Positions 1-53,786 of a stretch of 64,000 nt of DNA are shown here, one piece after another. The position numbers and the translations under genes are program-made. Source of the stretch: Schmidtea polychroa (lineage: Eukaryota); NCBI GenBank assembly GCA_044892525.1, contig CM097887.1, forward strand, positions 81,818,397-81,882,396. The letters run 5' to 3'. Under the pieces are notes generated by a model. The model was not told where the DNA came from. It saw only the letters and a program-made list of their open reading frames with translations, and did not search any database. The stretch's first letter is position 1. The number at the start of each line of letters is the position of its first letter.

Positions 1-66
1 GGATTTTGATTTTTTCGGTACAGAATGCCACTTTATAGATTTAAATAGAAATCTCTCAAATTGCAA

Positions 67-139
67 GCCTTCGTAGCTCAGTGGTTAGAGCACTGGTCTA
101 GTAAACCAGGGGTCGTGAGTTCAATTCTCACCGAAGGCA
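67..139 (+). tRNA. trnT: tRNA-Thr(AGT)
   Basis: Cloverleaf: GCCTTCG/CGAAGGC acceptor, GCTC/GAGC D stem, CTGGT-ctAGTaa-ACCAG anticodon arm, GTGAG-ttcaatt-CTCAC T arm, discriminator A73, no CCA. Confidence 0.97.
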
Positions 140-140
140 A

Positions 141-146
141 TTTTTT
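141..146 (+). terminator. RNA Pol III oligo-dT terminator (T6); present after every tRNA 3' end in the window
   Basis: TTTTTT starts 2 nt after the discriminator base in each unit. Confidence 0.85.
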
Positions 147-324
147 CCTAAATAAATTTTATCACATCAACATTAATCTTGTCTTGTCCGTTTTTGTTTC
201 TCGTATTAGAAAAATTCCAACAAAAAATCCTATTGATTGTCCGACTTGTGTATGGGTTGGATTTTGATTTTTTCGGTACAGAATGCCACTTTATAGATTT
301 AAATAGAAATCTCTCAAATTGCAA

Positions 325-397
325 GCCTTCGTAGCTCAGTGGTTAGAGCACTGGTCTAGTAAACCAGGGGTCGTGAGTTCAATTCTCACCGAAGGCA
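325..397 (+). tRNA. trnT: tRNA-Thr(AGT)
   Basis: Consensus copy. Confidence 0.97.
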
Positions 398-582
398 ATT
401 TTTTCCTAAATAAATTTTATCACATCAACATTAATCTTGTCTTGTCCGTTTTTGTTTCTAGTATTAGAAAAATTCCAACAAAAAATCCTATTGATTGTCC
501 GACTTGTGTATGGGTTGGATTTTGTTTTTTTCGGTACAGAATGCCACTTTAATAATTTAAATAGAAATCTCTCAAATTGCAA

Positions 583-655
583 GCCTTCGTAGCTCAGTGG
601 TTAGAGCACTGGTCTAGTAAACCAGGGGTCGTGAGTTCAATTCTCACCGAAGGCA
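583..655 (+). tRNA. trnT: tRNA-Thr(AGT)
   Basis: Consensus copy. Confidence 0.97.
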
Positions 656-840
656 ATTTTTTCCTAAATAAATTTTATCACATCAACATTAATCTTGTCT
701 TGTCCGTTTTTGTTTCTAGTATTAGAAAAATTCCAACAAAAAATCCTATTGATTGTCCGACTTGTGTATGGGTTGGATTTTGATTTTTTCGGTACAGAAT
801 GTTACTTTATAGATTTAAATAGAAATCTCTCAAATTGCAA

Positions 841-913
841 GCCTTCGTAGCTCAGTGGTTAGAGCACTGGTCTAGTAAACCAGGGGTCGTGAGTTCAATT
901 CTCACCGAAGGCA
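841..913 (+). tRNA. trnT: tRNA-Thr(AGT)
   Basis: Consensus copy. Confidence 0.97.
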
Positions 914-1098
914 ATTTTTTCCTAAATAAATTTTATCACATCAACATTAATCTTGTCTTGTCCGTTTTTGTTTCTAGTATTAGAAAAATTCCAACAAAAA
1001 ATCCTATTGATTATCCGACTTGTGTATGGGTTGGATTTTGATTTTTTCGGTACAGAATGCCACTTTATAGATTTAAATAGAAATCTCTCAAATTGCAA

Positions 1099-1171
1099 GC
1101 CTTCGTAGCTCAGTGGTTAGAGCACTGGTCTAGTAAACCAGGGGTCGTGAGTTCAATTCTCACCGAAGGCA
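1099..1171 (+). tRNA. trnT: tRNA-Thr(AGT)
   Basis: Consensus copy. Confidence 0.97.
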
Positions 1172-1356
1172 ATTTTTTCCTAAATAAATTTTATCACATC
1201 AACATTAATCTTGTCTTGTCCGTTTTTGTTTCTAGTATTAGAAAAATTCCAACAAAAAATCCTATTGATTGTCCGACTTGTGTATGGGTTGGATTTTGAT
1301 TTTTTCGGTACAGAATGTTACTTTATAGATTTAAATAGAAATCTCTCAAATTGCAA

Positions 1357-1429
1357 GCCTTCGTAGCTCAGTGGTTAGAGCACTGGTCTTGTAAACCAGG
1401 GGTCGTGAGTTCAATTCTCACCGAAGGCA
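1357..1429 (+). tRNA. trnT: tRNA-Thr variant with TGT anticodon
   Basis: Loop ctTGTaa (A34T at 1390), body otherwise consensus. Confidence 0.85.
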
Positions 1430-1614
1430 ATTTTTTCCTAAATAAATTTTATCACATCAACATTAATCTTGTCTTGTCCGTTTTTGTTTCTAGTATTAGA
1501 AAAATTCCAACAAAAAATCCTATTGATTGTCCGACTTGTGTATGGGTTGGATTTTGATTTTTTCGGTACAGAATGCCACTTTATAGATTTAAATAGAAAT
1601 CTCTCAAATTGCAA

Positions 1615-1687
1615 GCCTTCGTAGCTCAGTGGTTAGAGCACTGGTCTAGTAAACCAGGGGTCGTGAGTTCAATTCTCACCGAAGGCA
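1615..1687 (+). tRNA. trnT: tRNA-Thr(AGT)
   Basis: Consensus copy. Confidence 0.97.
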
Positions 1688-1872
1688 ATTTTTTCCTAAA
1701 TAAATTTTATCACATCAACATTAATCTTGTCTTGTCCGTTTTTGTTTCTCGTATTAGAAAAATTCCAACAAAAAATCCTATTGATTGTCCGACTTGTGTA
1801 TGGGTTGGATTTTGATTTTTTCGGTACAGAATGCCACTTTATAGATTTAAATAGAAATCTCTCAAATTGCAA

Positions 1873-1945
1873 GCCTTCGTAGCTCAGTGGTTAGAGCACT
1901 GGTCTAGTAAACCAGGGGTCGTGAGTTCAATTCTCACCGAAGGCA
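1873..1945 (+). tRNA. trnT: tRNA-Thr(AGT)
   Basis: Consensus copy. Confidence 0.97.
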
Positions 1946-2130
1946 ATTTTTTCCTAAATAAATTTTATCACATCAACATTAATCTTGTCTTGTCCGTTTT
2001 TGTTTCTAGTATTAGAAAAATTCCAACAAAAAATCCTATTGATTGTCCGACTTGTGTATGGGTTGGATTTTGTTTTTTTCGGTACAGAATGCCACTTTAA
2101 TAATTTAAATAGAAATCTCTCAAATTGCAA

Positions 2131-2203
2131 GCCTTCGTAGCTCAGTGGTTAGAGCACTGGTCTAGTAAACCAGGGGTCGTGAGTTCAATTCTCACCGAAG
2201 GAA
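2131..2203 (+). tRNA. trnT: tRNA-Thr(AGT) variant C72A (G1:A72 mismatch)
   Basis: Ends CGAAGGAA instead of CGAAGGCA. Confidence 0.75.
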
Positions 2204-2388
2204 ATTTTTTCCTAAATAAATTTTATCACATCAACATAAATCTTGTCTTGTCCGTTTTTGTTTCTAGTATTACAAAAATTCCAACAAAAAATCCTATTGA
2301 TTGTCCGACTTGTGTATGGGTTGGATTTTGATTTTTTCGGTACAGAATGCCACTTTATAGATTTACATAGAAATCTCTCAAATTGCAA

Positions 2389-2409
2389 GCCTTCGTAGCT
2401 CAGTGGTTA
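2389..2409 (+). pseudogene. 5' half (nt 1-21) of tRNA-Thr interrupted by element copy 1
   Basis: GCCTTCGTAGCTCAGTGGTTA followed directly by the element ATG. Confidence 0.95.
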
Positions 2410-4621
2410 ATGGAAAAACACACAACGATGATGCAATCGCCTACGAATGAATTACTCATCAATCTTAATCAAAAATTACCGAATTTTGGATTACTCAATT
2501 GCAAAATTGCAAAATCTTCAATCATATCTTTGTTGAAATCTCAAATTCAACAATCTCAAGCTATTTTGGATTTTATTTCAAAAGATTCGGAAGAGCCTTC
2601 AATTCTGGAACCTGTTGAATCAATTGAGGACATGCCTGAAGATTCAATGAAATTCTCTGAAGAAAAGATTCCACAACTTTCTACTATGCCTTTTTCAATT
2701 GAAGAAAGATTTCAGATTCTTGAGAAGACTATTGAATCTGTGTGTGGTAGGATTGATTTGATTTTTAATTCCGTAAATGATTATAATAAAAATATTGTTA
2801 AAGAGAATGGGAATCTAAATGAGAATACTAATACTGATTCTACTTTGGATTCTTATTCTAATAATGATGACTTTAAAATAAAAAAATTTAACAAATTATC
2901 TAAGGTTAATAATATTGTTGATTCAAAAAATACTTTAGTTTTAGGTTCAAAGTCAAATATTAAAATTAATCCTGTTAATTTGTCTAACAAATTAACTAGA
3001 TATTTATCGAAAAAAGAACGTGTGGAATTTTTGAAAAAATTTCCACGTTTTCTAAAATTAATTAAATTAAAAAATTCAAAATTTAAAGATAATTCAATTA
3101 ATTCTGAATTATCTTTAATTACTAAAAATGATTTTAACTTTATCACTGAATATGACCATTTGTATTTTCTTAATGGCCATTTTTTTGTCGTTATAAATTT
3201 AGACAAAAAATTAAAATCAAAAATTAAACCAAATAAATCTAATAATTATACTTTTATTAGTAAAATATGTAATTTAAATTTAAATACTAAAAATTTTATT
3301 TTAGTTCCAAATATAATTAAAAGGTTTTTATTTTCTCTTTCTAGCAAATTAGCTGGAACTACTTCAATTAAAAATAATAATCATAAGGGACTTATTATAA
3401 ATAAAATTCTACAAAATTTGAAAGATGAAAACCTGCTACCTGACTTTCTTCTTAGTTCAGAACTTAAGTTTGTCGACGGTGATTTTTTAATGAAAGACGT
3501 CTTTCAATCTCTAGATTGTTCTTTTACTTCTCCTAATGAAACTCGTATGGATTTGTCTAGATCACAATTAAATTTGTTATTTAAGAAATTTCCAGAGTTG
3601 AAGGAAATGTGTTTTGTCGAAAATACATCCAAAGATGCTTCCAATTTAATTAATATTAATAAATGAATTGAAATTAAATAGGAACTTCCCAAATAATATT
3701 TTTTTTGAATTTGGTAAATTTGTTAAAATTGCTAAAGATGAAAAGATTATATTTTCAACAAATGGGTCATCTGATGTACAGTTTAATCTTGGTCTATTTA
3801 ATCTTTTAGATATTATTAAAATTGACAGTGAATTGAATGATTTAGTTCTTCAACCTGAATCTTCTATGAGGCTTGTCAGTTTGGTTTTCCATTTGAATTA
3901 CTTGTTTTTAACAAAAGGTATTGAAATTTCTGGAAATATTCCTTATGATAATTATGTTATTAATTATATTCGGAATGCCTTACTTTTACATGGTGTTGTA
4001 GATCCTAAATTTTGTGAATCTCTCACACTTGACGAATTTGATAATTGGAGCGCTGACATGATAGAAAGAATTCCTTCTTCGTCATATTACTCTCAAAGTT
4101 GCAAGGAAAAGTTATTAAAATATAGGCAATGGAAACTAGAGGGGGAAGTTAATAAACTAAGAAATATTATTTCGCCTGAGACAATTAATGTTGTTAATAG
4201 ATTTTTGATTTCATTGGATGACTCTAATAAATCTATTAAGGAAGCAACTTTGAGTTTAGATGAACTAATGGATAAAATTAATACATTTAAACTAGGCGAC
4301 AATGACCCAGAAATTTTGAAATCTAAGCGGCTACTATACTTTATTTTGAGAGACAAGAAGTTGTTTCTAAGAAATAACAGTAAAATCTTCCAGTTACCTA
4401 TGACATGCAGAAAGATATGCACTCCAAAAATGTCATTATGTATTCACGAACTCTTGGACTTTCTGAAGGGGATAGAAAATCATTCATCTCCGATCTTTCC
4501 TACAATAGTTGACTCTCCATTGGTTATTGAATCACTTCCAACTGATATAGACGCTGAGACGGATACAATAAAATCTCGTACTCGAAATGGTCGAAGAAGA
4601 GCGTTATCCGATTCTAAATGA
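2410..4621 (+). pseudogene. ORF1 haplotype A (~736 aa if repaired), +1 frameshift near 3655-3667
   Basis: Track ORFs 2383-3666 and 3668-4621 align end to end with the 758-aa ORF1 of other copies; 13 nt stand where the others have 12. Confidence 0.85.
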
Positions 4622-4626
4622 AAATG

Positions 4627-4687
4627 TGTGCCTGCATCAGTGAAAATATCTGCTCCGTTCTCATATGAAACTGATGCAGAATGCACA
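4627..4687 (+). promoter_or_regulatory. Candidate stop-codon readthrough stem-loop 5 nt after the ORF1 TGA; equivalents at 15560, 23654, 31481, 39827, 48438, 57049
   Basis: TGTGC-CTGCATCAGT (4627-4641) pairs with ACTGATGCAG (4670-4679) and GCACA (4683-4687); stem invariant in all 7 copies. Confidence 0.6.
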
Positions 4688-7600
4688 AATAAACTTTCTG
4701 AAATTGACCAAACACGCTGGTTTACTGATGATGAAATTGATTATTTCCTTCTACATCATATCAATAATCCAATGTTTACCTTTATAAGATGTTTCATTGT
4801 TAGTATCTTATGTTCTGATATTGCTGAAAATGTTGTTGATCTTCCCAAAGCTATTTTTGAAGCTCAAGTAATTCTATGTCCACTCAACATTAACAACTCA
4901 CATTGGGTCTTGTTTGTTTATTGTAAATCTTCATTAACTTCTTATTTTATCGATCCGATCTTGAAGAATAGAAATAGATTAGTAAATAAGGAGAGAGCTG
5001 TTAAAATAAACAATGTATTAAACTGTACTTTCAATCTTGATTCATTAATAATTGAACACCCGTATAAAGATCTTGTTTATCAAGATAATAATTACGATTG
5101 TGGTCCTTTCATTTGCGGTTATGCGATGATTGTATCTCAAGAATGGAGCTCAATTCCTAATACGTTTGTCGAATACATTAGGAAACAATTGTTTCACTGT
5201 CAATCTATTTCTACTGTATCAGGAGGTGGCTTATCTAAAAATCATTTTCTCAATAAAATCAACTTCAAAAAGGCAATAAAACCTAAAAGCAAACCCATTA
5301 TGAATGTCAAAATTATAAACCCTAATAATGAGAAAGCTTGTGTCTCATCTCTGATAAGCAAATGGTACGAAAAATATCCAAGTATATTAGTTCTTTCTCC
5401 CGAAATAACAAATAGTTTAATCAGTCAAAATGATAATTTTATAATTGAAAATATTACATTTTTGCAATTTAGAAACGTTGATCATATAATTTGTATAATT
5501 CCTAACGATAATTGCTGGTGTCTATTGTTTTGCTCAGTCAAATATGGACATAGTTATCTTTTTGATCTTAAACCTGGTTCGATTACTGAAAGATTGATAG
5601 GAATTTGTGAAAATATTACCGATTATTTGAATAAATTTACTCTAAATAAAAAGGTTTATTTTGAAAAGAATCAAAATGCTTTTCGTTTAAAAATTTCATC
5701 TGAAGATCCGTTTGAATATGCAGTTGGGTACATTGCCTTCTTAGAAAAATATCTTTTTAATAGAATATTTGATAGAGATTATGTGATTAAAACTCTCAAA
5801 CATATGAATGTGCAGCAGGCAATTGAAATTAACAAAAATTTAAATTTAATTAATTGCAAAATTACTGATAAAATTATAACTAATTTTTTTAATAACTTGA
5901 AACATTCCTCAGATTTTATTTTACTTAATAATACAATGTGCACTGCAATTTATGAAGACTGTACTCAATATCTGAAAGATTTTTTAAATATTGAGCATTT
6001 GATAAAAGCACAGGTTATTTTTTGTATTATGGCCCCTCCTAAAGCTCAAGAAATATTGTTTGTCATTGACTATAAAACTGATGAGCATTACTTTCTCAAT
6101 CCCTCAACTTTAATTACTAATTTTAATTATTTATTTACTAGTCAAACTTTGTTGCATAAAATCAACGAAATTAGAGAATCGGCCGGTTGTTGTATAAAAT
6201 CTGGTAATATTCCGCATGATGTTCGTGGTTCTGGCCTTGTGAGTCGTGTACTCATTTGTGCTTTTATAAAAAACTATATTTCTGATTTATCTTTAGAGAA
6301 CCTCAATTTATTTGATATAGGCAGTGTAATTACTTCTTTGTTACCTCCAATAACGGAAACGATCAAGGTTTCGAAAAAAGACTTAAATGTTAAAAAAGAA
6401 ATTGGAAAACCTTCTTTGGAGCGTCGAATTGAGAAAATTAATCTCCTTTTATCAAATTTAGAAAACAGCAACGTTAATGAAATCTGTAAGATAATCATTG
6501 ACAATTCATTGCGTCAAAGATCAGATGACAAAACTATGATTCGTAGACCTTATCTGGGAAATAAACCTTCTTACGACAAACCTGACAAAAATATACTAAT
6601 ATCTGGCTTCCTATCTAATATGAAATTGACAGTGAATAAAATACTGGCTGATGAGAAAATTGATGAAAGACCTTCAATAACTGACTACATTTCTAATTTC
6701 ACTCATTCTGATCCTGTCATTAAATCTTACGATAAAGTGTTTAATTTCTGTCTGAGTTCTTTGTCAACTCTAGTTCTGAATCTAATTTCCACTGAAGATG
6801 TAAAGTTTGAAATTAAAAAAGCAGACAACACTTCTCCTGGACTTGATGATATCAAGTATAAAGATTTATCTATTTTTGATCCTGAATACAAATTATTGAC
6901 ATTTTTCTTTAACAAAATAATAGTCGATAAAAATGTTCCAGAATGTTTAAAATCTTTCAAAACAATTATGATTCCGAAGCCTGATAAAGGTGACAAGTAC
7001 ACTTTAGTTTCTTCATGGCGACCAATAGCTCTATTGTCAGTCATTTACAAAGTGTTTGCGTCAGTGTTAGCTAGTCGTTTGACTAGTTGGGTGAAGGTCA
7101 ATAATTTACTACACATTGGTCAGAAAGGAGGCTCAATCCATGACGGATGTGTTGAACATAACTCTGTTCTTTCTTCCTGCTTGGAACACTCAAAATACAG
7201 TAAAAACACTCCAATTGCTATAGCCTGGCTTGATATTAAAGACGCCTTTGGCAGTGTCCCTCATGATTACATGTGGAAAATCCTGCGTCGCGTTGGAGTC
7301 AGTGAGGAATTCACCAACATCTTGAAGCTGTTATATACCGATACAAGTTCTTTCTACACTTGTGGTCCAATTATTACACCAAACATTGCCATTAAACAGG
7401 GTGTCAAACAAGGATGCCCTATTTCAATGATTTTGTTTGCAATTGCGATAAATCCTGTTCTTGAATCTGTTAGTCAATCAAATGTGAAACCTTTCAAAAT
7501 TGCTGGATCTTCGGTTCAAGTTCTTGCATATGCTGATGACATTGCACTTGTTGCAAATAATGTTTCCGATTTACAACGCATAATTGACATTGCAGTCGAT

Positions 7601-9166
7601 ACTGCTAATGAAATAGGTTTTGAATATCGACCTGAAAAGTGTGCTTTTCTTGAACTTCCAAATATTAACTCTGAAAGTAAAATCGCAATCAATGGAATAA
7701 ATATTAAGAAACTTTTACCAAACGAATTTTACCAATATCTGGGAGTTCCAGTCGGTGAGGAAACTGACCAAAGTCCTTACGAGATTTTGAATAAAGTTAT
7801 TGTTGATGCAAATAAAATTGCAGAATCTGACTTGTTGGGATGGCAAAAATTGAAAGCCTACAAAGTCTTTCTACACTTGCGCCTAATCTTTCCATTTAGA
7901 ACGAGAGAAATAAAGATCAGTGCTCTTTCAACAACACAAGTTAATTGTACGAGTAAACTGAGAAGTATTCTAAGAAAGATCTTGAATTTGCCCAACCATT
8001 CTGAGACCAGTTATCTTTACAACTCCATTGAAAATGGAGGTGCGTCTTGTATTGATCTTCTTGATGAATATCATACACAGACGATTAGTCATTTTTTCCG
8101 ACTCTTTACCTCTAATTGCATGTTCACTCGTAATATCAATATTGACTCTTTGAAATTCGTCACTGGTCCTCGACTGGGAATCAAGGAACCATCAATGCAA
8201 GAGAGTTTCAACTGGATAAATGGAGCTGAAAATATCAAAACTCATTCTGGAAAGAAAACGAGATTCTATCGACCTCGGATAGCAATCAAGTACTTTCAAA
8301 GAACTCATGGTATTACCTTGTCTTTTGAAGTCGAGAAAAATGAGCCTGTTCTTCGATTTACAACTATCGAACGTGGTACTTGTGTGTTGACAGCTTTGAA
8401 TCGGAAAGCGATTTCTAAAATCATACATATTGCACTTTATGATGCTTATTTTTCTAAATGGAAATTAAGTAGCACGAGTGGATCTTGTGCTTATAGTTTA
8501 TCACCGAAAATCAATAAAGCGATTTACAATGGCAATCTTCGTGAAAGTCCTTGGAAATTCATACATCGTGCACGTACAAACACATTGTCTACCTTTGCTA
8601 AACCTTATCGAAAACCTGATGAAAGACTTTGTAGGCGTTGTCATATTGAAGAGGAAACACTTTGCCATGTTCTGCAAACATGCAAAATTCACCAAATCCT
8701 TGCTCTTAAAAGACATAACGAATGCTTACGACTTATTACTGAGCAACTGAAAAATCCTTTTCTTATTGTTGTTATTGACCACACTTGTTCACTTGTTGTT
8801 GACTCTAAGGAGCGAGTTGATTTAATGATAACGGATAATGATAAAAAGAAAATTTTCATGGTAGACGTCAAATGTCCTTTTGACACTCTACAGACCTTTG
8901 AAACGGTAGATAAAGGAAATTTGACAAAATACGATAATCTTCGACAGCAAATACAAGTTGCAAAGCCAAATTTTAAGGTGGAACTTTATACTTGTATCAT
9001 TGGCTCATTAGGTTCTGTTCCACCAATGACATATGATGTGCTTGAGAAGATTGGAGTACCTAATCATAAAGTTGAATCTCTTGTAAGAGAATGTGCAATG
9101 AGCAATATAATGCACTCGGCTAAATCTTGGCATTACCATGCATATGGTATCTTACCAGGCTTCTAA
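4628..9166 (+). CDS. ORF2: Ulp1/C48 protease (plus 2 degenerate repeats) - reverse transcriptase - CCHC - restriction-like endonuclease, 1512 aa from GTG; true start uncertain
   Basis: H92/D109/Q152/C158 (SHW, IDP, QDNNYDCG); RT motifs SPGLD, WRPIAL, LDIKDAF, GVKQGCP, YADD (7529), YQYLG; CRRCx8Hx4C (8630-8683); RHN, VD, DVK, KY endonuclease motifs. Confidence 0.95.
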   Translation: MPASVKISAPFSYETDAECTNKLSEIDQTRWFTDDEIDYFLLHHINNPMFTFIRCFIVSILCSDIAENVVDLPKAIFEAQVILCPLNINNSHWVLFVYCKSSLTSYFIDPILKNRNRLVNKERAVKINNVLNCTFNLDSLIIEHPYKDLVYQDNNYDCGPFICGYAMIVSQEWSSIPNTFVEYIRKQLFHCQSISTVSGGGLSKNHFLNKINFKKAIKPKSKPIMNVKIINPNNEKACVSSLISKWYEKYPSILVLSPEITNSLISQNDNFIIENITFLQFRNVDHIICIIPNDNCWCLLFCSVKYGHSYLFDLKPGSITERLIGICENITDYLNKFTLNKKVYFEKNQNAFRLKISSEDPFEYAVGYIAFLEKYLFNRIFDRDYVIKTLKHMNVQQAIEINKNLNLINCKITDKIITNFFNNLKHSSDFILLNNTMCTAIYEDCTQYLKDFLNIEHLIKAQVIFCIMAPPKAQEILFVIDYKTDEHYFLNPSTLITNFNYLFTSQTLLHKINEIRESAGCCIKSGNIPHDVRGSGLVSRVLICAFIKNYISDLSLENLNLFDIGSVITSLLPPITETIKVSKKDLNVKKEIGKPSLERRIEKINLLLSNLENSNVNEICKIIIDNSLRQRSDDKTMIRRPYLGNKPSYDKPDKNILISGFLSNMKLTVNKILADEKIDERPSITDYISNFTHSDPVIKSYDKVFNFCLSSLSTLVLNLISTEDVKFEIKKADNTSPGLDDIKYKDLSIFDPEYKLLTFFFNKIIVDKNVPECLKSFKTIMIPKPDKGDKYTLVSSWRPIALLSVIYKVFASVLASRLTSWVKVNNLLHIGQKGGSIHDGCVEHNSVLSSCLEHSKYSKNTPIAIAWLDIKDAFGSVPHDYMWKILRRVGVSEEFTNILKLLYTDTSSFYTCGPIITPNIAIKQGVKQGCPISMILFAIAINPVLESVSQSNVKPFKIAGSSVQVLAYADDIALVANNVSDLQRIIDIAVDTANEIGFEYRPEKCAFLELPNINSESKIAINGINIKKLLPNEFYQYLGVPVGEETDQSPYEILNKVIVDANKIAESDLLGWQKLKAYKVFLHLRLIFPFRTREIKISALSTTQVNCTSKLRSILRKILNLPNHSETSYLYNSIENGGASCIDLLDEYHTQTISHFFRLFTSNCMFTRNINIDSLKFVTGPRLGIKEPSMQESFNWINGAENIKTHSGKKTRFYRPRIAIKYFQRTHGITLSFEVEKNEPVLRFTTIERGTCVLTALNRKAISKIIHIALYDAYFSKWKLSSTSGSCAYSLSPKINKAIYNGNLRESPWKFIHRARTNTLSTFAKPYRKPDERLCRRCHIEEETLCHVLQTCKIHQILALKRHNECLRLITEQLKNPFLIVVIDHTCSLVVDSKERVDLMITDNDKKKIFMVDVKCPFDTLQTFETVDKGNLTKYDNLRQQIQVAKPNFKVELYTCIIGSLGSVPPMTYDVLEKIGVPNHKVESLVRECAMSNIMHSAKSWHYHAYGILPGF

Positions 9167-9675
9167 TTATTAAAATTCGATTGAAAATAATTAATTTTGT
9201 TTCTCATATTAATTAAAAAAAAAAAAAAACTGTCATCATTATTTATTTAAAGCATTATGAGGAATTGAATATCATTTTAATCTTGCCACTTATTAGTTTT
9301 GATAACCTAAACATGATAATAATCTTTTCAATTCATCATGAAGAGGTGGTCTGTTCTAATTTCAGATTCGATAATGATGAAAAAATTCAGCTGAAACAAG
9401 AAATCTTTGCAGAAACCTAGAATGGCGCTTAATTAATTTGGCTCTAAAACTTCTGCAAGTGTTATGCTAAGCCGGAAACGAATCTCCGATGAAATCCAAT
9501 ATGCCTGAGAAATTTCAAGAAACAAAGTGCTTTCGAGAAGAGTATTCTCCCAACCGATATAATTATCATAGAGATTTTGATCACCCAAGTGCCGACATTT
9601 CTTGAATGGCTGTTCCAAGTTGAACGTTCTCGACAGATAAAAATCCAAAAACTTGTTATATTAATAAAATTTTAT

Positions 9676-9717
9676 CTAGTAAACCAGGGGTCGTGAGTTC
9701 AATTCTCACCGAAGGCA
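9676..9717 (+). pseudogene. 3' half (nt 32-73) of interrupted tRNA-Thr
   Basis: CTAGTAAACCAG...GAAGGCA directly after the element 3' end. Confidence 0.95.
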
Positions 9718-9902
9718 ATTTTTTCCTAAATAAATTTTATCACATCAACATTAATCTTGTCTTGTCCGTTTTTGTTTCTAGTATTAGAAAAATTCCAACA
9801 AAAAATCCTATTGATTGTCCGACTTGTGTATGGGTTGGATTTTGTTTTTTTCGGTACAGAATGCCACTTTAATAATTTAAATAGAAATCTCTCAAATTGC
9901 AA

Positions 9903-9975
9903 GCCTTCGTAGCTCAGTGGTTAGAGCACTGGTCTAGTAAACCAGGGGTCGTGAGTTCAATTCTCACCGAAGGCA
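9903..9975 (+). tRNA. trnT: tRNA-Thr(AGT)
   Basis: Consensus copy. Confidence 0.97.
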
Positions 9976-10160
9976 ATTTTTTCCTAAATAAATTTTATCA
10001 CATCAACATTAATCTTGTCTTGTCCGTTTTTGTTTCTAGTATTAGAAAAATTCCAACAAAAAATCCTATTGATTGTCCGACTTGTGTATGGGTTGGATTT
10101 TGATTTTTTCGGTACAGAATGTTACTTTATAGATTTAAATAGAAATCTCTCAAATTGCAA

Positions 10161-10233
10161 GCCTTCGTAGCTCAGTGGTTAGAGCACTGGTCTAGTAAAC
10201 CAGGGGTCGTGATTTCAATTCTCACCGAAGGCA
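10161..10233 (+). tRNA. trnT: tRNA-Thr(AGT) variant G53T (T stem/box B damaged)
   Basis: GTGATTTCAATT instead of GTGAGTTCAATT (10213). Confidence 0.7.
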
Positions 10234-10418
10234 ATTTTTTCCTAAATAAATTTTATCACATCAACATTAATCTTGTCTTGTCCGTTTTTGTTTCTAGTAT
10301 TAGAAAAATTCCAACAAAAAATCCTATTGATTATCCGACTTGTGTATGGGTTGGATTTTGATTTTTTCGGTACAGAATGCCACTTTATAGATTTAAATAG
10401 AAATCTCTCAAATTGCAA

Positions 10419-10491
10419 GCCTTCGTAGCTCAGTGGTTAGAGCACTGGTCTAGTAAACCAGGGGTCGTGAGTTCAATTCTCACCGAAGGCA
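10419..10491 (+). tRNA. trnT: tRNA-Thr(AGT)
   Basis: Consensus copy. Confidence 0.97.
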
Positions 10492-10676
10492 ATTTTTTCC
10501 TAAATAAATTTTATCACATCAACATTAATCTTGTCTTGTCCGTTTTTGTTTCTAGTATTAGAAAAATTCCAACAAAAAATCCTATTGATTGTCCGACTTG
10601 TGTATGGGTTGGATTTTGATTTTTTCGGTACAGAATGTTACTTTATAGATTTAAATAGAAATCTCTCAAATTGCAA

Positions 10677-10749
10677 GCCTTCGTAGCTCAGTGGTTAGAG
10701 CACTGGTCTAGTAAACCAGGGGTCGTGAGTTCAATTCTCACCGAAGGCA
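10677..10749 (+). tRNA. trnT: tRNA-Thr(AGT)
   Basis: Consensus copy. Confidence 0.97.
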
Positions 10750-10934
10750 ATTTTTTCCTAAATAAATTTTATCACATCAACATTAATCTTGTCTTGTCCG
10801 TTTTTGTTTCTAGTATTAGAAAAATTCCAACAAAAAATCCTATTGATTGTCCGACTTGTGTATGGGTTGGATTTTGATTTTTTCGGTACAGAATGCCACT
10901 TTATAGATTTAAATAGAAATCTCTCAAATTGCAA

Positions 10935-11007
10935 GCCTTCGTAGCTCAGTGGTTAGAGCACTGGTCTAGTAAACCAGGGGTCGTGAGTTCAATTCTCACC
11001 GAAGGCA
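10935..11007 (+). tRNA. trnT: tRNA-Thr(AGT)
   Basis: Consensus copy. Confidence 0.97.
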
Positions 11008-11192
11008 ATTTTTTCCTAAATAAATTTTATCACATCAACATTAATCTTGTCTTGTCCGTTTTTGTTTCTCGTATTAGAAAAATTCCAACAAAAAATCCTA
11101 TTGATTGTCCGACTTGTGTATGGGTTGGATTTTGATTTTTTCGGTACAGAATGCCACTTTATAGATTTAAATAGAAATCTCTCAAATTGCAA

Positions 11193-11265
11193 GCCTTCGT
11201 AGCTCAGTGGTTAGAGCACTGGTCTAGTAAACCAGGGGTCGTGAGTTCAATTCTCACCGAAGGCA
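11193..11265 (+). tRNA. trnT: tRNA-Thr(AGT)
   Basis: Consensus copy. Confidence 0.97.
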
Positions 11266-11450
11266 ATTTTTTCCTAAATAAATTTTATCACATCAACATT
11301 AATCTTGTCTTGTCCGTTTTTGTTTCTAGTATTAGAAAAATTCCAACAAAAAATCCTATTGATTGTCCGACTTGTGTATGGGTTGGATTTTGTTTTTTTC
11401 GGTACAGAATGCCACTTTAATAATTTAAATAGAAATCTCTCAAATTGCAA

Positions 11451-11523
11451 GCCTTCGTAGCTCAGTGGTTAGAGCACTGGTCTAGTAAACCAGGGGTCGT
11501 GAGTTCAATTCTCACCGAAGGCA
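11451..11523 (+). tRNA. trnT: tRNA-Thr(AGT)
   Basis: Consensus copy. Confidence 0.97.
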
Positions 11524-11708
11524 ATTTTTTCCTAAATAAATTTTATCACATCAACATAAATCTTGTCTTGTCCGTTTTTGTTTCTAGTATTACAAAAATT
11601 CCAACAAAAAATCCTATTGATTGTCCGACTTGTGTATGGGTTGGATTTTGATTTTTTCGGTACAGAATGCCACTTTATAGATTTAAATAGAAATCTCTCA
11701 AATTGCAA

Positions 11709-11781
11709 GCCTTCGTAGCTCAGTGGTTAGAGCACTGGTCTAGTAAACCAGGGGTCGTGAGTTCAATTCTCACCGAAGGCA
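11709..11781 (+). tRNA. trnT: tRNA-Thr(AGT)
   Basis: Consensus copy. Confidence 0.97.
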
Positions 11782-11966
11782 ATTTTTTCCTAAATAAATT
11801 TTATCACATCAACATTAATCTTGTCTTGTCCGTTTTTGTTTCTAGTATTAGAAAAATTCCAACAAAAAATCCTATTGATTGTCCGACTTGTGTATGGGTT
11901 GGATTTTGTTTTTTTCGGTACAGAATGCCACTTTAATAATTTAAATAGAAATCTCTCAAATTGCAA

Positions 11967-12039
11967 GCCTTCGTAGCTCAGTGGTTAGAGCACTGGTCTA
12001 GTAAACCAGGGGTCGTGAGTTCAATTCTCACCGAAGGCA
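11967..12039 (+). tRNA. trnT: tRNA-Thr(AGT)
   Basis: Consensus copy. Confidence 0.97.
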
Positions 12040-12224
12040 ATTTTTTCCTAAATAAATTTTATCACATCAACATAAATCTTGTCTTGTCCGTTTTTGTTTC
12101 TAGTATTAGAAAAATTCCAACAAAAAATCCTATTGATTGTCCGACTTGTGTATGGGTTGGATTTTGATTTTTTCGGTACAGAATGCCACTTTATAGATTT
12201 AAATAGAAATCTCTCAAATTGCAA

Positions 12225-12297
12225 GCCTTCGTAGCTCAGTGGTTAGAGCACTGGTCTAGTAAACCAGGGGTCGTGAGTTCAATTCTCACCGAAGGCA
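12225..12297 (+). tRNA. trnT: tRNA-Thr(AGT)
   Basis: Consensus copy. Confidence 0.97.
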
Positions 12298-12482
12298 ATT
12301 TTTTCCTAAATAAATTTTATCACATCAACATTAATCTTGTCTTGTCCGTTTTTGTTTCTAGTATTAGAAAAATTCCAACAAAAAATCCTATTGATTGTCC
12401 GACTTGTGTATGGGTTGGATTTTGATTTTTTCGGTACAGAATGTTACTTTATAGATTTAAATAGAAATCTCTCAAATTGCAA

Positions 12483-12555
12483 GCCTTCGTAGCTCAGTGG
12501 TTAGAGCACTGGTCTAGTAAACCAGGGGTCGTGAGTTCAATTCTCACCGAAGGCA
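12483..12555 (+). tRNA. trnT: tRNA-Thr(AGT)
   Basis: Consensus copy. Confidence 0.97.
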
Positions 12556-12740
12556 ATTTTTTCCTAAATAAATTTTATCACATCAACATTAATCTTGTCT
12601 TGTCCGTTTTTGTTTCTCGTATTAGAAAAATTCCAACAAAAAATCCTATTGATTTTCCGACTTGTGTATGGGTTGGATTTTGATTTTTTCGGTACAGAAT
12701 GCCACTTTATAGATTTAAATAGAAATCTCTCAAATTGCAA

Positions 12741-12813
12741 GCCTTCGTAGCTCAGTGGTTAGAGCACTGGTCTAGTAAACCAGGGGTCGTGAGTTCAATT
12801 CTCACCGAAGGCA
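12741..12813 (+). tRNA. trnT: tRNA-Thr(AGT)
   Basis: Consensus copy. Confidence 0.97.
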
Positions 12814-12998
12814 ATTTTTTCCTAAATAAATTTTATCACATCAACATTAATCTTGTCTTGTCCGTTTTTGTTTCTAGTATTAGAAAAATTCCAACAAAAA
12901 ATCCTATTGATTGTCCGACTTGTGTATGGGTTGGATTTTGTTTTTTTCGGTACAGAATGCCACTTTAATAATTTAAATAGAAATCTCTCAAATTGCAA

Positions 12999-13071
12999 GC
13001 CTTCGTAGCTCAGTGGTTAGAGCACTGGTCTAGTAAACCAGGGGTCGTGAGTTCAATTCTCACCGAAGGAA
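12999..13071 (+). tRNA. trnT: tRNA-Thr(AGT) variant C72A
   Basis: CGAAGGAA end (13070). Confidence 0.75.
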
Positions 13072-13256
13072 ATTTTTTCCTAAATAAATTTTATCACATC
13101 AACATAAATCTTGTCTTGTCCGTTTTTGTTTCTAGTATTACAAAAATTCCAACAAAAAATCCTATTGATTGTCCGACTTGTGTATGGGTTGGATTTTGAT
13201 TTTTTCGGTACAGAATGCCACTTTATAGATTTACATAGAAATCTCTCAAATTGCAA

Positions 13257-13277
13257 GCCTTCGTAGCTCAGTGGTTA
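13257..13277 (+). pseudogene. 5' half of tRNA-Thr interrupted by copy 2
   Basis: nt 1-21 then ATG. Confidence 0.95.
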
Positions 13278-15554
13278 ATGGAAAAACACACAACGATGAT
13301 GCAATCGCCTACGAATGAATTACTCATCAATCTCAATCAAAAATTACCGAATTTTGGATTACTCAATTGCAAAATTGCAAAATCTTCAATCATGTCTATG
13401 TTGAAATCTCAAATTCAACAATCTCAAGCTATTTTGGACCTGATTTCAAAAGATTCTGAAGAACCTTCAATTCTGGAACCGGTTGAATCAATTAAAGAAA
13501 TGCCAGAAGATTCTTTGGAATGCTCAAAGGAAAAGATGCCACTCCTTTTAAATTTGCCTTTTCCAATTGAGGAAAGATTTCAGATACTGGAGAAGTCTAT
13601 CGAATCTATATCTGGTAGGATTGATTTGATTTCTAATTTTCTTAATGTTAATAATAATGACAATAATAAAAACTTTTTTATTAAAAATTTAAAAGTAAAT
13701 AATATTTCAAATAAGCATCTTCCTGTAATTTCTAACACTAAACCTGAAATTAATTCAAACTACTCTTCTAAATTAGTGGATAGTTCCGATAAATTGAAGG
13801 CGCCTTTTGTTGATGTTGAAATAGAGAAGTCGAAAACTCTGCATGTGGATTATAAGGGAAGTAATACTGCGTTTAAAGAGGATAATGATATAGATAGATC
13901 AACTCGTATTTTGACAAAAAAAGAACGAGCTAATTTTTTGAAGAGCTTTCCAAAGTTTATTAATTTAATCAAATTAGGTGAATCAAAATTTAAAGAGAAT
14001 TTAATTAATTATGAACTTAATTTAATAACTAAATCAAAATTAAACTTTAATATTAATAATTTTGAAAAGTTATATTTTGAAAATGGAAAGTTTTTTATTT
14101 CTATTTATAACAAAAATGGAATGAGACCTGAGGTTAGGAATATGAAAGCTTTAATAAAACCTAAAATTATCTCTAGCAGTGGCCGAATTTTAAATAAAAC
14201 TTTTATTTCAAGTTTAATTCGTACTGACAACAATTATAGTAAAATCTCTGCTTCTTTAGCAATTAAGAAATTTTTATTTGCATTTTCTGACAAATTAGCT
14301 GCAACTGTTTCCATTAAAAATATTAATCAAAAGGGCTCTGTCATTAATAAAGAATTAGATTTACTAAAAAAAGAAAATAAACTTCCACAATTTTTAATAA
14401 ATTCAGATATTAAATATCTAAATGGGGAATTTGTAATAAATGACATATTCAGTCCTTCAGAATCTCAAAATGAAGTTGTGAATCGCAGAGAGTTGTCTAG
14501 ATCACAATTAAATCAATTATTTAAAAGTCATCCAGAGCTGAAAGAGATGTGTTTTGTTGAAAACTCATCTAAATGTGCATCAAAATTGACTAATTTGTTA
14601 CATAATTTAAAATTAAATAATAACTTTCTTGAGAATATTGAGTTTGATTCAGGAAGGTTTTTCAAATCTAAAGAAACTGTAAATAATGAATCAATTGGTG
14701 CGTCTGACATCATGTTTAACTTGGGACTGCTCAACTTCATTGACATTTCTAAGAAAAATGATGATTTTAAGGAACTTCTACTTTCAACTTCTTCTCCTCA
14801 AAAGCTGGTTGATTTGATCTTTACGATAAATTATAAAATCTTGACGAAGGACATCAACTACTTGAACAATATTACCTATGGAAATTATGTCATGAATTAT
14901 TTTATAAATATTTTACTTTTACACTCTGTAGCTGATCTTGAAACTTGTGAATCTCTCACAATTGACGACTTTGATTATTGGAGCGCTGACATGATAGAAA
15001 AAATTCCTTCTTCGTCATATTACTCTCAAAGTTGCAAGGAAAAGTTACTTAAATATAGGCAGTGGAAACTAGAGGGGGAAGTTGATAAACTAAGAAATAT
15101 TATTTCGCCTGAGACAATTAATGTTGTTAATAAATTTTTGATTTCATCGGATGACTCTAATAAATCTATTAAGGAAGCAACTTTGAGTTTAGATGAACAA
15201 ATGGACAAAATTAATACATTTAAACTAGGCGACAATGACCCAGACATTTTGAAATCTAAGCGGTTACTATACTTTATTTTGAGAGACAAGAAGTTGTTTC
15301 TAAGAAATAACAGCAAAATCTTCCAATTACCTATGACATGCAAAAAAATATGCACTCCAAAAATGTCATTATGTATTCATGAACTCTTGGACTTTCTTAA
15401 GGGGATAGAAAATCATTCATCTCCGATCTTTCCTACAATAGTTGACTCTCCATTGGTTATTGAATCACTTCCAACTGATATAGACGCTGAGACGGATACA
15501 ATAAAATCTCGTACTCGAAATGGTCGAAGAAGAGCGTTATCCGATTCTAAATGA
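13278..15554 (+). CDS. ORF1 haplotype B, 758 aa, unknown function
   Basis: Long ORF from the junction ATG (MEKHTT) to TGA; coiled-coil-like N-terminal segment, basic C-terminus (KSRTRNGRRR). Confidence 0.9.
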   Translation: MEKHTTMMQSPTNELLINLNQKLPNFGLLNCKIAKSSIMSMLKSQIQQSQAILDLISKDSEEPSILEPVESIKEMPEDSLECSKEKMPLLLNLPFPIEERFQILEKSIESISGRIDLISNFLNVNNNDNNKNFFIKNLKVNNISNKHLPVISNTKPEINSNYSSKLVDSSDKLKAPFVDVEIEKSKTLHVDYKGSNTAFKEDNDIDRSTRILTKKERANFLKSFPKFINLIKLGESKFKENLINYELNLITKSKLNFNINNFEKLYFENGKFFISIYNKNGMRPEVRNMKALIKPKIISSSGRILNKTFISSLIRTDNNYSKISASLAIKKFLFAFSDKLAATVSIKNINQKGSVINKELDLLKKENKLPQFLINSDIKYLNGEFVINDIFSPSESQNEVVNRRELSRSQLNQLFKSHPELKEMCFVENSSKCASKLTNLLHNLKLNNNFLENIEFDSGRFFKSKETVNNESIGASDIMFNLGLLNFIDISKKNDDFKELLLSTSSPQKLVDLIFTINYKILTKDINYLNNITYGNYVMNYFINILLLHSVADLETCESLTIDDFDYWSADMIEKIPSSSYYSQSCKEKLLKYRQWKLEGEVDKLRNIISPETINVVNKFLISSDDSNKSIKEATLSLDEQMDKINTFKLGDNDPDILKSKRLLYFILRDKKLFLRNNSKIFQLPMTCKKICTPKMSLCIHELLDFLKGIENHSSPIFPTIVDSPLVIESLPTDIDAETDTIKSRTRNGRRRALSDSK

Positions 15555-15560
15555 AAATGT

Positions 15561-23648: not shown

Positions 23649-23654
23649 AGATGT

Positions 23655-31475: not shown

Positions 31476-31481
31476 AGATGT

Positions 31482-39821: not shown

Positions 39822-39827
39822 AAATGT

Positions 39828-48432: not shown

Positions 48433-48438
48433 AGATGT

Positions 48439-53713: not shown

Positions 53714-53786
53714 GCCTTCGTAGCTCAGTGGTTAGAGCACTGGTCTAGAAAACCAGGGGTCGTGAGTTCAATTCTCACCGAAGGCA
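53714..53786 (+). tRNA. tRNA-Thr body with AGA (Ser) anticodon
   Basis: Loop ctAGAaa (T36A at 53749), short variable loop of the Thr body. Confidence 0.7.

What the first reader, a model, noticed from the sequence alone, without database searches (positions are those of the whole stretch)
4700..6343. Three tandem Ulp1/C48-like domains: one active, two pseudo-proteases
Seen: domain 1 (aa ~25-190) has a full catalytic set (H92-W93, D109, Q152, C158). Two downstream segments align by eye. RWFTDDEIDYF matches CKITDKIITNF (aa 410). EAQVILCPLNINNSHWVLFVY..SYFIDP matches DHIICIIPNDNCWCLLFC..SYLFDL (aa 285-314) and KAQVIFCIMAPPKAQEILFVI..HYFLNP (aa 460-492). CGPFICGY matches SRVLICAF (aa 539). Repeats 2 and 3 lack the catalytic His and Cys. 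Inference: a triplicated protease fold whose dead copies may act as SUMO/ubiquitin-like binding modules or scaffolds, possibly countering SUMO-dependent silencing at Pol III loci.
Basis: partly seen in the sequence, partly recalled or inferred. Interest (0 to 1): 0.7.

Follow-up and report, generated by a model that had tools for sequence, protein, structure and literature searches.

The report
Retrotransposon protease domain triplicated, two copies dead
A jumping gene that inserts into threonine tRNA genes starts its main protein with three copies of a SUMO-protease-like fold, only the first of which keeps its catalytic residues, an arrangement I could not find described for this kind of element.

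Summary
Window 4700-6343 encodes aa 25-572 of a 1512-aa ORF2 (4628-9166).

- **D1 (aa 27-195)** is a Pfam Peptidase_C48 domain. It has H92, D109, Q152 and C158, plus both Trp of the Gly-Gly clamp.
- **D2 (aa 229-396) and D3 (aa 397-570)** have no Pfam hit and only weak pairwise similarity to D1. They are still C48 homologues:
  - Profile-profile probability against D1 is 97.6-97.7%.
  - Bridging relatives link them to C48, and one bridging domain passes Pfam's C48 cut-off on its own.
  - AlphaFold2 models (pLDDT 88 and 94) match only Ulp1, SENP and NEDP1 structures (TM 0.59-0.69).
- **Catalytic residues:** in this element both domains lack the His and Cys. Family-wide, D3 usually keeps His, has Asn for Asp, and has Ser for Cys.

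**Context:** the host is an R2/NeSL-like retrotransposon with a restriction-like endonuclease. Seven full copies sit at one position inside tandem tRNA-Thr genes. ORF2 follows ORF1 in frame after a UGA and a conserved hairpin, so it is probably made as a readthrough fusion.

**Best reading (inferred, not shown):** D1 is the element's processing protease and cuts at a conserved (L/V/I)xGG motif just after itself. D2 and D3 stay on the reverse transcriptase as non-catalytic binding modules.

This is a new variant of a known kind.

The parts
2410..9674 (+). Copy 1 of a ~7.3-kb non-LTR retrotransposon inserted inside a tRNA-Thr(AGT) gene. Six more full copies lie at 13278-20606, 21372-28691, 29199-36521, 37545-44874, 46156-53485 and 54767-62055. 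An eighth, divergent copy starts at 62305.
   Evidence: Junction motifs are identical in all seven full copies. The tRNA array is shown. The copy comparison is.
2389..2409 (+). 5' part of the interrupted tRNA-Thr (nt 1-21), directly followed by the ORF1 ATG.
   Evidence: Sequence read at the equivalent junction of copy 2; motif positions.
9675..9717 (+). 3' part of the interrupted tRNA-Thr (from nt 31). Nine bases of the tRNA (nt 22-30) are deleted at the insertion.
2410..4621 (+). ORF1. It is frameshifted in this copy (2383-3666 and 3668-4621). It is intact (758 aa from the ATG) in copies 2, 5, 6 and 7, for example 13278-15554. It ends in a TGA that is in frame with ORF2.
   Evidence: No Pfam family matched.
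4627..4687 (+). Conserved RNA hairpin 5 nt downstream of the ORF1 UGA; a candidate readthrough stimulator. Equivalent to 15560-15620 in copy 2.
   Evidence: MFE -21.2 kcal/mol, z -4.28. In 7 family members 96.9% of cells pair, against 16-44% when the partner is slid, and 4 pairs carry compensatory changes.
4628..9166 (+). ORF2, 1512 aa: D1, D2, D3, a basic region, reverse transcriptase, a CCHC motif and a restriction-like endonuclease. There is no ATG upstream of D1.
4706..5212 (+). D1 (aa 27-195): catalytically complete Ulp1/C48 domain with W31, H92, W93, D109, Q152 and C158.
   Evidence: Pfam C48 E 7.5e-9. PDB profile hits to Ulp1, SENP1, SENP2 and SENP8. Invariant residues.
5216..5230 (+). 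V-S-G-G-G (aa 197-201) in the poorly conserved D1-D2 linker; a candidate (L/V/I)xGG cleavage site.
   Evidence: It is the only GG in ORF2 outside two GG motifs at aa 834 and 1137, in and after the reverse-transcriptase domain. It is conserved in 7 of 8 full-length relatives and in most multi-domain relatives. ORF1 has no GG.
5312..5815 (+). D2 (aa 229-396): C48-fold pseudo-protease. C296 is at the His position, W297 is kept, D313 is at the Asp position, and there is no nucleophile (region around Y364).
   Evidence: AF2 pLDDT 87.8, pTM 0.83. Foldseek top hits are NEDP1, SENP and Ulp1, E 8.5e-6, TM 0.59-0.66. hhalign to D1 97.7%.
5816..6337 (+). D3 (aa 397-570): C48-fold pseudo-protease. Q474 is at the His position, N491 at Asp, R533 at the oxyanion Gln and S539 at Cys. 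The G-S-G-L-x-S-x-x-L-I-C motif is highly conserved.
   Evidence: AF2 pLDDT 94, pTM 0.89. Foldseek top hit is Ulp1 1euv_A, E 3.5e-6, TM 0.69, rmsd 3.2. hhalign to D1 97.6%.
6971..7747 (+). Reverse transcriptase domain (aa 782-1040).
   Evidence: Pfam RVT_1 E 1.3e-29. The best solved relatives are R2 retrotransposon proteins, E 7.9e-54.
8630..8980 (+). C-terminal CCHC motif (aa 1335-1355) followed by a restriction-like endonuclease motif (...VDLMI...VDVK...). The end coordinate is approximate.
   Evidence: CCHC pattern found. The D...DxK motif was read directly from the translation. It was not tested by a profile.

Best explanation
ORF2 of a tRNA-Thr-specific, R2/NeSL-like retrotransposon begins with three tandem C48 (Ulp1-like) domains that arose by two successive duplications.

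D1 is a working cysteine protease. Because ORF2 has no start codon of its own, it is most likely made as an ORF1-ORF2 fusion. The fusion would arise by readthrough of a UGA, helped by a hairpin just downstream.

D1 then cuts the fusion at the conserved (L/V/I)xGG motif about 10 residues after its own end. This would separate ORF1p-D1 from D2-D3-RT-endonuclease, much as viral CE-clan proteases cut polyproteins at GG-X.

D2 and D3 are non-catalytic descendants of the protease. They stay attached to the reverse transcriptase as protein-binding or scaffold modules, using the remodelled former active-site region. They are not enzymes and not nucleic-acid binders.

Shown: the three C48 folds, their catalytic status, the duplication history, the in-frame UGA plus hairpin, and the conserved GG motif. 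Inferred: the readthrough, the cleavage at GG, and any binding role of D2 and D3.
For: Fold and homology:
- D1 is Pfam C48 and aligns to Ulp1 and SENP with the catalytic residues in place.
- D2 and D3 align to D1 by hhalign at 97.7% and 97.6% over about 158 columns.
- The D1 profile hits the second domains of P0026 and P0023 at 48 and 30 bits. The D3 profile hits the same domains at 44 and 48 bits. The D2 profile hits the second domains of P0027 and P0025 at 45 and 44 bits.
- The second domain of P0023 passes Pfam's C48 cut-off by itself (27.6 bits).
- The AF2 models are confident and match only CE-clan proteases.

History:
- D2, D3 and the second domains of two-domain relatives form one clade (SH-aLRT 95). 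D2 (98) and D3 (100) are each monophyletic.
- Domain number rises from 1 to 2 to 3 as relatives get closer to this element by reverse-transcriptase identity.

Processing model:
- ORF1 and ORF2 are in frame across one TGA in the window and in 6 of 6 relatives' loci examined.
- The hairpin shows compensatory changes.
- The GG(G) motif in the least conserved stretch of ORF2 is kept in most multi-domain relatives, often with Leu, Ile or Val three residues before the cut.
- D1 keeps both Trp of the Gly-Gly clamp.

Non-catalytic role of D2 and D3:
- The catalytic positions are substituted.
- D2 and D3 are neutral to acidic (pI 4.7-8.8, D3 always below 6.6), while aa 571-781 is basic.
- They are as conserved across the family as D1.
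Against: - No cleavage has been observed, and the GG motif could be just a flexible hinge.
- The motif is missing in two multi-domain relatives (P0014, P0031) and in all single-domain relatives. D1 must therefore have some function that does not need it.
- Ulp1 domains also occur in DNA transposons that make no polyprotein (PMC2836005). That argues for a host-directed role.
- D3 keeps His in 16 of 22 relatives and Ser at the nucleophile position, so residual hydrolase activity in relatives is not excluded.
- The AF2 alignments are shallow (18-20 sequences).
- The domain tree is a quick search on 168 columns.
Confidence: 0.45

Rival explanations
1. D1 is a host-directed deSUMOylase, deNEDDylase or deubiquitinase acting on chromatin or Pol III factors at tRNA genes. 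D2 and D3 are ubiquitin-like-protein binding modules that recruit or hold the substrate. D3 would be a natural Cys-to-Ser 'substrate trap'.
For: - D1 is closest to Ulp1, SENP1 and SENP8 and keeps the Gly-Gly Trp clamp.
- Ulp1 domains recur in DNA transposons that need no polyprotein processing (PMC2836005).
- Single-domain relatives lack the GG motif.
- D3 conserves Ser at the Cys position and mostly His, and its former active-site loop is its most conserved motif.
- The family lives in tRNA genes.
Against: - D3 has lost both clamp Trp and D2 has lost one.
- This element's D3 also lacks the His (Q474).
- Insertion is at an exact nucleotide and differs between tRNA species among relatives. That needs sequence recognition, not a generic modifier.
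- No binding or cleavage data exist.
Confidence: 0.25
2. D2 and D3 replace the zinc-finger/Myb N-terminal domain of R2-type elements. They provide target-site recognition, either by binding tRNA-gene DNA or by binding a protein bound there.
For: - ORF2 has no zinc finger or Myb domain N-terminal to the reverse transcriptase. NeSL and Utopia elements have N-terminal zinc fingers (PMC4640811).
- D2 and D3 occupy that position in the protein.
- The multi-domain relatives whose flanks could be read target tRNA genes.
Against: - D2 and D3 are neutral to acidic, which is poor for DNA binding.
- ORF1p (pI 8.8) or the basic region aa 571-781 could do the recognition instead.
- I did not test whether D2/D3 sequence correlates with target tRNA.
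Confidence: 0.15
3. D2 and D3 are functionless relics of duplication that are simply tolerated.
For: There is no Pfam signal, and D2 has lost every catalytic residue.
Against: - Both are kept full-length in relatives down to about 25% identity, with conservation equal to D1.
- They give confident folded models.
- D3 has many invariant residues.
- D3 is retained even where D2 was lost (P0014).
Confidence: 0.05

Closest known systems
Ulp1-like protease domain of NeSL-1 and Utopia-1_TSP (nematode RLE-type non-LTR retrotransposons; PMC4640811)
   Same: A C48 protease domain sits N-terminal to the reverse transcriptase in an element with a C-terminal CCHC motif and restriction-like endonuclease, and the element targets a multicopy small-RNA gene. 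The nearest named reverse-transcriptase relatives here are nematode proteins, some with C48.
   Different: Those elements are described with one protease domain plus N-terminal zinc fingers. This family has three C48-fold domains (two non-catalytic) and no N-terminal zinc finger. It also has a separate ORF1 joined by an in-frame UGA with a hairpin, and it targets tRNA genes.
Ulp1, SENP and NEDP1 (Peptidase C48, CE clan)
   Same: All three domains share the fold. D1 has the His-Asp-Cys triad, the oxyanion Gln and both Trp of the Gly-Gly tunnel.
   Different: D2 and D3 lack the triad. In D3 the family consensus is His, Asn and Ser, and in this element it is Gln, Asn and Ser. Neither reaches Pfam's threshold. 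All three are embedded in a retroelement polyprotein.
Viral CE-clan processing proteases: adenain, ASFV pS273R, poxvirus I7L (established knowledge, recalled from memory)
   Same: They are CE-clan Cys proteases that cut their own polyproteins at Gly-Gly-X or (M/L/I)xGG-X. The conserved (L/V/I)xGG after D1 has that form. ASFV S273R appears among the structural matches of D3 (rank 20).
   Different: Cleavage here is only inferred. Tandem pseudo-protease copies are not a feature of those viral enzymes.
Retroviral Gag-Pro-Pol made by stop-codon readthrough (MuLV type; established knowledge, recalled from memory)
   Same: There is an in-frame stop, a structured RNA a few nucleotides downstream, and a protease as the first domain after the stop.
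   Different: The protease class is different (C48 Cys rather than aspartic). This is a non-LTR element, and readthrough has not been demonstrated.
tRNA-gene-specific NeSL-related elements: NeSL-1_TV (tRNA-Pro), LIN15_SM (tRNA-Arg), LIN25_SM (tRNA-Glu) (PMC4640811)
   Same: They are RLE-type elements inserted at a fixed position inside tRNA genes, with an A/T-rich 3' end and no poly(A) tail (compared).
   Different: The target here is tRNA-Thr, with Val and Phe in relatives. That paper mentions a protease domain only for Utopia-1_TSP and the nematode NeSL families. I could not compare sequences because Repbase is not available here.
R2 retrotransposon proteins (solved structures 9nl2, 9nl3, 9dou, 8gh6)
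   Same: They are the best solved relatives of the reverse-transcriptase part (E 7.9e-54). They share site-specific insertion into a tandem RNA gene, uniform 5' and 3' junctions and a small target deletion.
   Different: R2 has N-terminal zinc-finger and Myb domains, a single ORF and no protease.

Membership tests
Peptidase C48 (Ulp1/SENP), D1 | Sequence match above Pfam's curated threshold | tested here: met
   36-38 bits against a cut-off of 20.7.
Peptidase C48 (Ulp1/SENP), D1 | His-Asp-Cys triad with the oxyanion Gln | tested here: met
   H92, D109, Q152 and C158 align to the Ulp1 and SENP1 motifs. They are invariant in close relatives and present in 22-24 of the 25 domains the D1 profile collected.
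Peptidase C48 (Ulp1/SENP), D1 | Isopeptidase or endopeptidase activity after Gly-Gly | not testable with these tools
   This needs an enzyme assay.
Peptidase C48, D2 and D3 | CE-clan / C48 fold | tested here: met
   AF2 pLDDT 87.8 and 94.0. Foldseek hits at E<=0.001 are all CE-clan proteases (Ulp1, SENP, NEDP1 and bacterial relatives); TM 0.59-0.69 for the leading hits.
Peptidase C48, D2 and D3 | Sequence match above Pfam's threshold | tested here: not met
   There is no Pfam hit even at E<=10. Homology shows only through profiles and bridging sequences.
Peptidase C48, D2 and D3 | Catalytic His and Cys | tested here: not met
   D2 has C296 and roughly Y364. D3 has Q474 and S539. They are C48-derived pseudo-proteases, not C48 peptidases.
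RLE-type non-LTR retrotransposon (R2/NeSL group) | Reverse transcriptase most similar to R2/NeSL-type elements | tested here: met
   The best PDB hits are R2 proteins. Named database relatives are nematode C48-bearing reverse transcriptases and arthropod R2.
RLE-type non-LTR retrotransposon (R2/NeSL group) | C-terminal CCHC plus PD-(D/E)xK restriction-like endonuclease, and no APE domain | tested here: inconclusive
   The CCHC is found at aa 1335. A D...DVK motif can be read in the translation. There is no Pfam APE hit. The endonuclease fold was not tested by profile or structure.
RLE-type non-LTR retrotransposon (R2/NeSL group) | Site-specific insertion in one orientation into a repeated gene | tested here: met
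   Seven copies lie at the identical position and orientation in tRNA-Thr, each with the same 9-bp deletion.
NeSL clade in the strict sense | Reverse-transcriptase phylogeny with Repbase NeSL, Utopia, R5 and LIN references | not tested

The most novel reading that the evidence does not exclude
D3, and perhaps D2, is a naturally evolved Cys-to-Ser 'substrate-trap' version of a SUMO or ubiquitin-like protease. It would tether the reverse transcriptase-endonuclease to a modified host protein at tRNA genes, for example SUMOylated Pol III machinery. Alternatively it would hold the GG-ended product of D1 cleavage, keeping ORF1p-D1 bound to D2-D3-RT without a covalent link. Either way, a protease fold would have been turned into a targeting or assembly device of a retrotransposon.
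Probability: 0.12. Interest if true: 0.85.

Novelty: new variant of a known kind. Interest (0 to 1): 0.6.

Why it matters
A single Ulp1-like protease domain in NeSL and Utopia elements has been known since 2000, but its role has never been settled. This family offers a sharper handle, because four features occur together in one conserved unit:
- an active protease;
- a conserved GG motif next to it;
- an upstream readthrough signal;
- two conserved pseudo-protease descendants that stay on the reverse transcriptase.

That makes two questions directly testable. One is whether the domain processes a polyprotein or acts on host ubiquitin-like modifiers. The other is what pseudo-enzymes do in a mobile element. 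It also adds tRNA-Thr, tRNA-Val and tRNA-Phe to the list of targets of site-specific elements. Such elements are of interest as programmable gene-insertion tools, as R2 is.

Tried and rejected
- **Pairwise BLASTP** between the three segments was too weak to decide.
- **Pfam** on D2, D3, the aa 601-781 region and ORF1 gave nothing.
- **PDB sequence-profile searches** with D2 and D3 gave nothing.
- **First hhalign with 5-sequence profiles** gave only 49%, 18% and 1.6% probability. It became decisive only after relatives from the full-library search were added.
- **dN/dS among the window's copies** was not feasible. The D1-D3 region has 7 variable sites in 1.7 kb across seven copies, and relatives are too diverged.
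- **Host organism** could not be named. Close relatives occur only in unlabelled Logan, ENA and JGI assemblies.
- **Rfam** gave no family for the tandem repeat that flanks relative L003.
- **The R5 planarian paper** (PubMed 12777502) is not held.
- **'D2 and D3 bind DNA'** was considered and downgraded because of their charge.
- **'GGG is only a duplication hinge'** was considered. It is less likely because no such motif lies between D2 and D3, but it is not excluded.
Full report
**1. What is at the coordinates**

Window 4700-6343 lies in a 1512-aa ORF at 4628-9166 on the + strand, covering aa 25-572. Pfam finds Peptidase_C48 at aa 72-187 and RVT_1 at aa 782-1040. The C-terminus carries a CCHC motif at aa 1335, followed by a D...DVK motif that I read directly from the translation. 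The best solved relatives of the C-terminal two thirds are R2 retrotransposon proteins, with E 7.9e-54. The ORF is therefore ORF2 of a non-LTR retrotransposon with a restriction-like endonuclease.

**2. Genomic context**

- The window is a tandem array of 258-bp units, each holding a tRNA-Thr(AGT) gene. There are 36 tRNAs.
- The array is interrupted by seven full element copies of about 7.3 kb in the tRNA's orientation. An eighth, divergent copy is cut off by the window end.
- In all seven full copies the element starts after tRNA nt 21 and the tRNA resumes at nt 31, so 9 bp are deleted.
- The element begins directly with the ORF1 ATG.
- Copies 2-7 differ from one another at fewer than 100 sites. 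ORF2 is about 99.8% identical across all seven.
- Relatives recovered from public assemblies are joined to a tRNA-Val gene (L002) and to the 3' part of a tRNA-Phe gene (L005). L006 ends in a sequence that looks like a tRNA D-arm.

**3. D1**

The segment alone scores 36 bits against Pfam C48, where the cut-off is 20.7. A profile of D1 from five family members hits Ulp1 (1euv, E 1.2e-7), SENP1, SENP2 and SENP8. The alignment places H92-W93, D109, Q152 and C158 on the catalytic motifs. These residues, and W31 (the second Trp of the Gly-Gly clamp), are invariant in the close relatives. H92, D109, Q152 and C158 are present in 22-24 of the 25 domains the D1 profile collected, W93 in all 25 and W31 in 17. 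The exceptions include two second domains of two-domain relatives. D1 is predicted to be active.

**4. D2 and D3, sequence evidence**

Taken alone the evidence is weak:
- BLASTP gives E 0.002 over 35 residues for D1-D3 and E 20 for D1-D2.
- Pfam finds nothing in D2 or D3.
- PDB profile searches find nothing.

Four relatives at 25-43% identity cover the whole N-terminal 620 aa. D2 and D3 are as conserved as D1.

A D2+D3 profile searched against 1.84 billion representative proteins found only 26 proteins. The ten I scanned against Pfam were all elements of this family or fragments of them, with one exception that gave no hit. Among the 26 are relatives with D1 plus a single second domain (P0023, P0025, P0026, P0027) and one with D1 plus D3 only (P0014). 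These bridge the gap:

| Profile | Target (second domain) | Score |
|---|---|---|
| D1 | P0026 | 48 bits |
| D1 | P0023 | 30 bits |
| D3 | P0026 | 44 bits |
| D3 | P0023 | 48 bits |
| D2 | P0027 | 45 bits |
| D2 | P0025 | 44 bits |

All six scores are, whose E-values refer to a 29-sequence set. The second domain of P0023 on its own passes Pfam's C48 threshold at 27.6 bits, E 3e-6. With the enlarged alignments, hhalign gives 97.7% for D1-D2 and 97.6% for D1-D3 over about 158 collinear columns.

**5. D2 and D3, structure evidence**

| Domain | Alignment | pLDDT | pTM | Best Foldseek PDB hits |
|---|---|---|---|---|
| D2 | 18 sequences | 87.8 | 0.83 | NEDP1/SENP8, then SENP3, SENP5, SENP2, Ulp1; E 8.5e-6; TM 0.59-0.66 |
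| D3 | 20 sequences | 94.0 | 0.89 | Ulp1 1euv_A; E 3.5e-6; TM 0.69; rmsd 3.2 Å |

The models are and were made without templates. Every hit at E<=0.001 is a CE-clan protease. Against viral models, D3 hits ubiquitin-like proteases of giant viruses and, further down the list, ASFV S273R.

**6. Catalytic status**

From the hhalign register:

| D1 residue | D2 equivalent | D3 equivalent |
|---|---|---|
| H92 | C296 | Q474 |
| W93 | W297 | E475 |
| D109 | D313 | N491 |
| Q152 | not determined | R533 |
| C158 | roughly Y364 (poorly aligned, mostly gapped) | S539 |
| C163 | I369 | C544 |

Across the family, D2 never has His at the His position. D3 has His in 16 of 22, Asn in 18 and Asp in 4, and Ser in 15, Thr in 1 and Asn in 4 at the Cys position. 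Its G-S-G-L-x-S-x-x-L-I-C stretch is its most conserved motif. D3 is therefore a conserved Cys-to-Ser derivative, and this particular element has additionally lost the His. D2 is fully degenerate at the active site.

**7. History**

In a tree of 59 domains, D2, D3 and the second domains of two-domain relatives form one clade apart from D1 and the single-domain outgroups (SH-aLRT 95). D2 (98) and D3 (100) are each monophyletic. The second domain of P0014 nests inside D3, so P0014 lost D2.

Relatives fall into three groups by reverse-transcriptase identity:
- All but one relative at 40% or more have three domains; the exception is P0014 (48%), which has D1 and D3 only.
- The only full-length relative with D1 plus an undivided second domain, P0037, is at about 33%. 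P0023 and P0026 are N-terminal fragments.
- Those at about 30%, including nematode NeSL-like proteins, have one.

The simplest history is two steps. The protease was duplicated and the copy lost its catalytic residues, and then the dead copy was duplicated again. The tree is a quick search on 168 columns, so it is indicative only.

**8. How it probably works**

*Readthrough.* ORF2 has no ATG before D1. ORF1 and ORF2 are in frame across a single TGA in the window and in all six relatives' loci. Five nucleotides after the UGA a 14-bp hairpin begins. Its MFE is -21.2 kcal/mol and its z-score is -4.28. In seven family members 96.9% of cells pair, against 16-44% when the partner is slid, and four pairs carry compensatory changes. 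This is the layout of a programmed readthrough signal. It also explains why the first residues of ORF2 (V-P-A ... D-A-x-x-T) are conserved.

*Cleavage site.* ORF2 contains only three GG sites. Two are conserved motifs in and after the reverse-transcriptase domain, at aa 834 and 1137. The third, V-S-G-G-G at aa 197-201, lies in the least conserved stretch of the protein. It is kept in most multi-domain relatives, often as L-x-G-G. ORF1 has no GG. CE-clan proteases cut after Gly-Gly, which is established knowledge.

*Model.* I infer that D1 cuts the readthrough fusion after G200. That would leave D2-D3 on the reverse transcriptase-endonuclease.

*Role of D2 and D3.* They are neutral to acidic, while aa 571-781 is basic. 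This favours a protein-binding or scaffold role over nucleic-acid binding.

*Counter-evidence.* Two multi-domain relatives and all single-domain relatives lack the GG motif. Ulp1 domains also occur in DNA transposons that make no polyprotein (PMC2836005). A host-directed role for D1 remains a serious rival.

**9. Comparison with what is known**

Kojima and Jurka (PMC4640811) describe a single N-terminal Ulp1-like domain in nematode NeSL elements and in Utopia-1_TSP. They also describe tRNA-specific NeSL relatives: NeSL-1_TV, LIN15_SM and LIN25_SM. My full-text searches found no description of tandem or pseudo-protease C48 domains in retrotransposons. The library is incomplete, so this is absence in what I could search.

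I rate the finding a new variant of a known kind.

**10. Limits**

- The host organism is unknown. It is a eukaryote with about 31% G+C, and the ORFs read open in the standard code.
- No enzymology, no complex models and no whole-N-terminus model were possible.

Noticed in passing
window 15552-15625 (copy 2); 4619-4687 in copy 1; also L001-L006: There is an in-frame UGA between ORF1 and ORF2, followed after 5 nt by a conserved 14-bp hairpin with compensatory changes. This is probably a programmed readthrough signal.
   Followed up: yes
window 1-2409, 9675-13277 and the shorter arrays between element copies: The 258-bp tandem tRNA-Thr(AGT) array is the target of the element. Insertion lies inside the gene (after nt 21, resuming at nt 31) and deletes 9 bp. 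The element has no 5' UTR, because the ORF1 ATG is its first base.
   Followed up: partly
window 2410-4200 compared with 13278-15100: In copy 1, the first ~1.8 kb of ORF1 is about 30% diverged from copies 2-7, with several indels and a frameshift. ORF2 is about 99.8% identical. This is a mosaic or recombinant element.
   Followed up: partly
window 62284-64000: An eighth element copy starts at 62305 after a different tRNA 5' half (GCCCCTATAGCTCAGAGGTTA, Thr-TGT/CGT-like). It carries a third ORF1 variant and is cut off by the window end.
   Followed up: no
window 1357-1429 and 53714-53786: Two array members have changed anticodons: TGT (Thr) and AGA (read as Ser by ARAGORN). These are point variants within the otherwise uniform array.
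   Followed up: no
window 21372-28691 and 29199-36521: Copies 3 and 4 have broken ORF2s (263+1234 aa and 1174+348 aa). Copy 7 has a 45-bp deletion in the 3' UTR. An A-run in the 3' UTR varies in length between copies.
   Followed up: no
L003 1-140 and 7520-8223: A three-domain relative (P0031) is flanked on both sides by a ~200-bp tandem repeat with no Rfam match and no tRNA. This may be a different multicopy target.
   Followed up: partly
L002 7040-8323; L005 7473-7531: Relatives are inserted in a tRNA-Val gene within a Val-AAC/CAC/TAC cluster and in a tRNA-Phe(GAA) gene. Target tRNA differs between subfamilies.
   Followed up: partly
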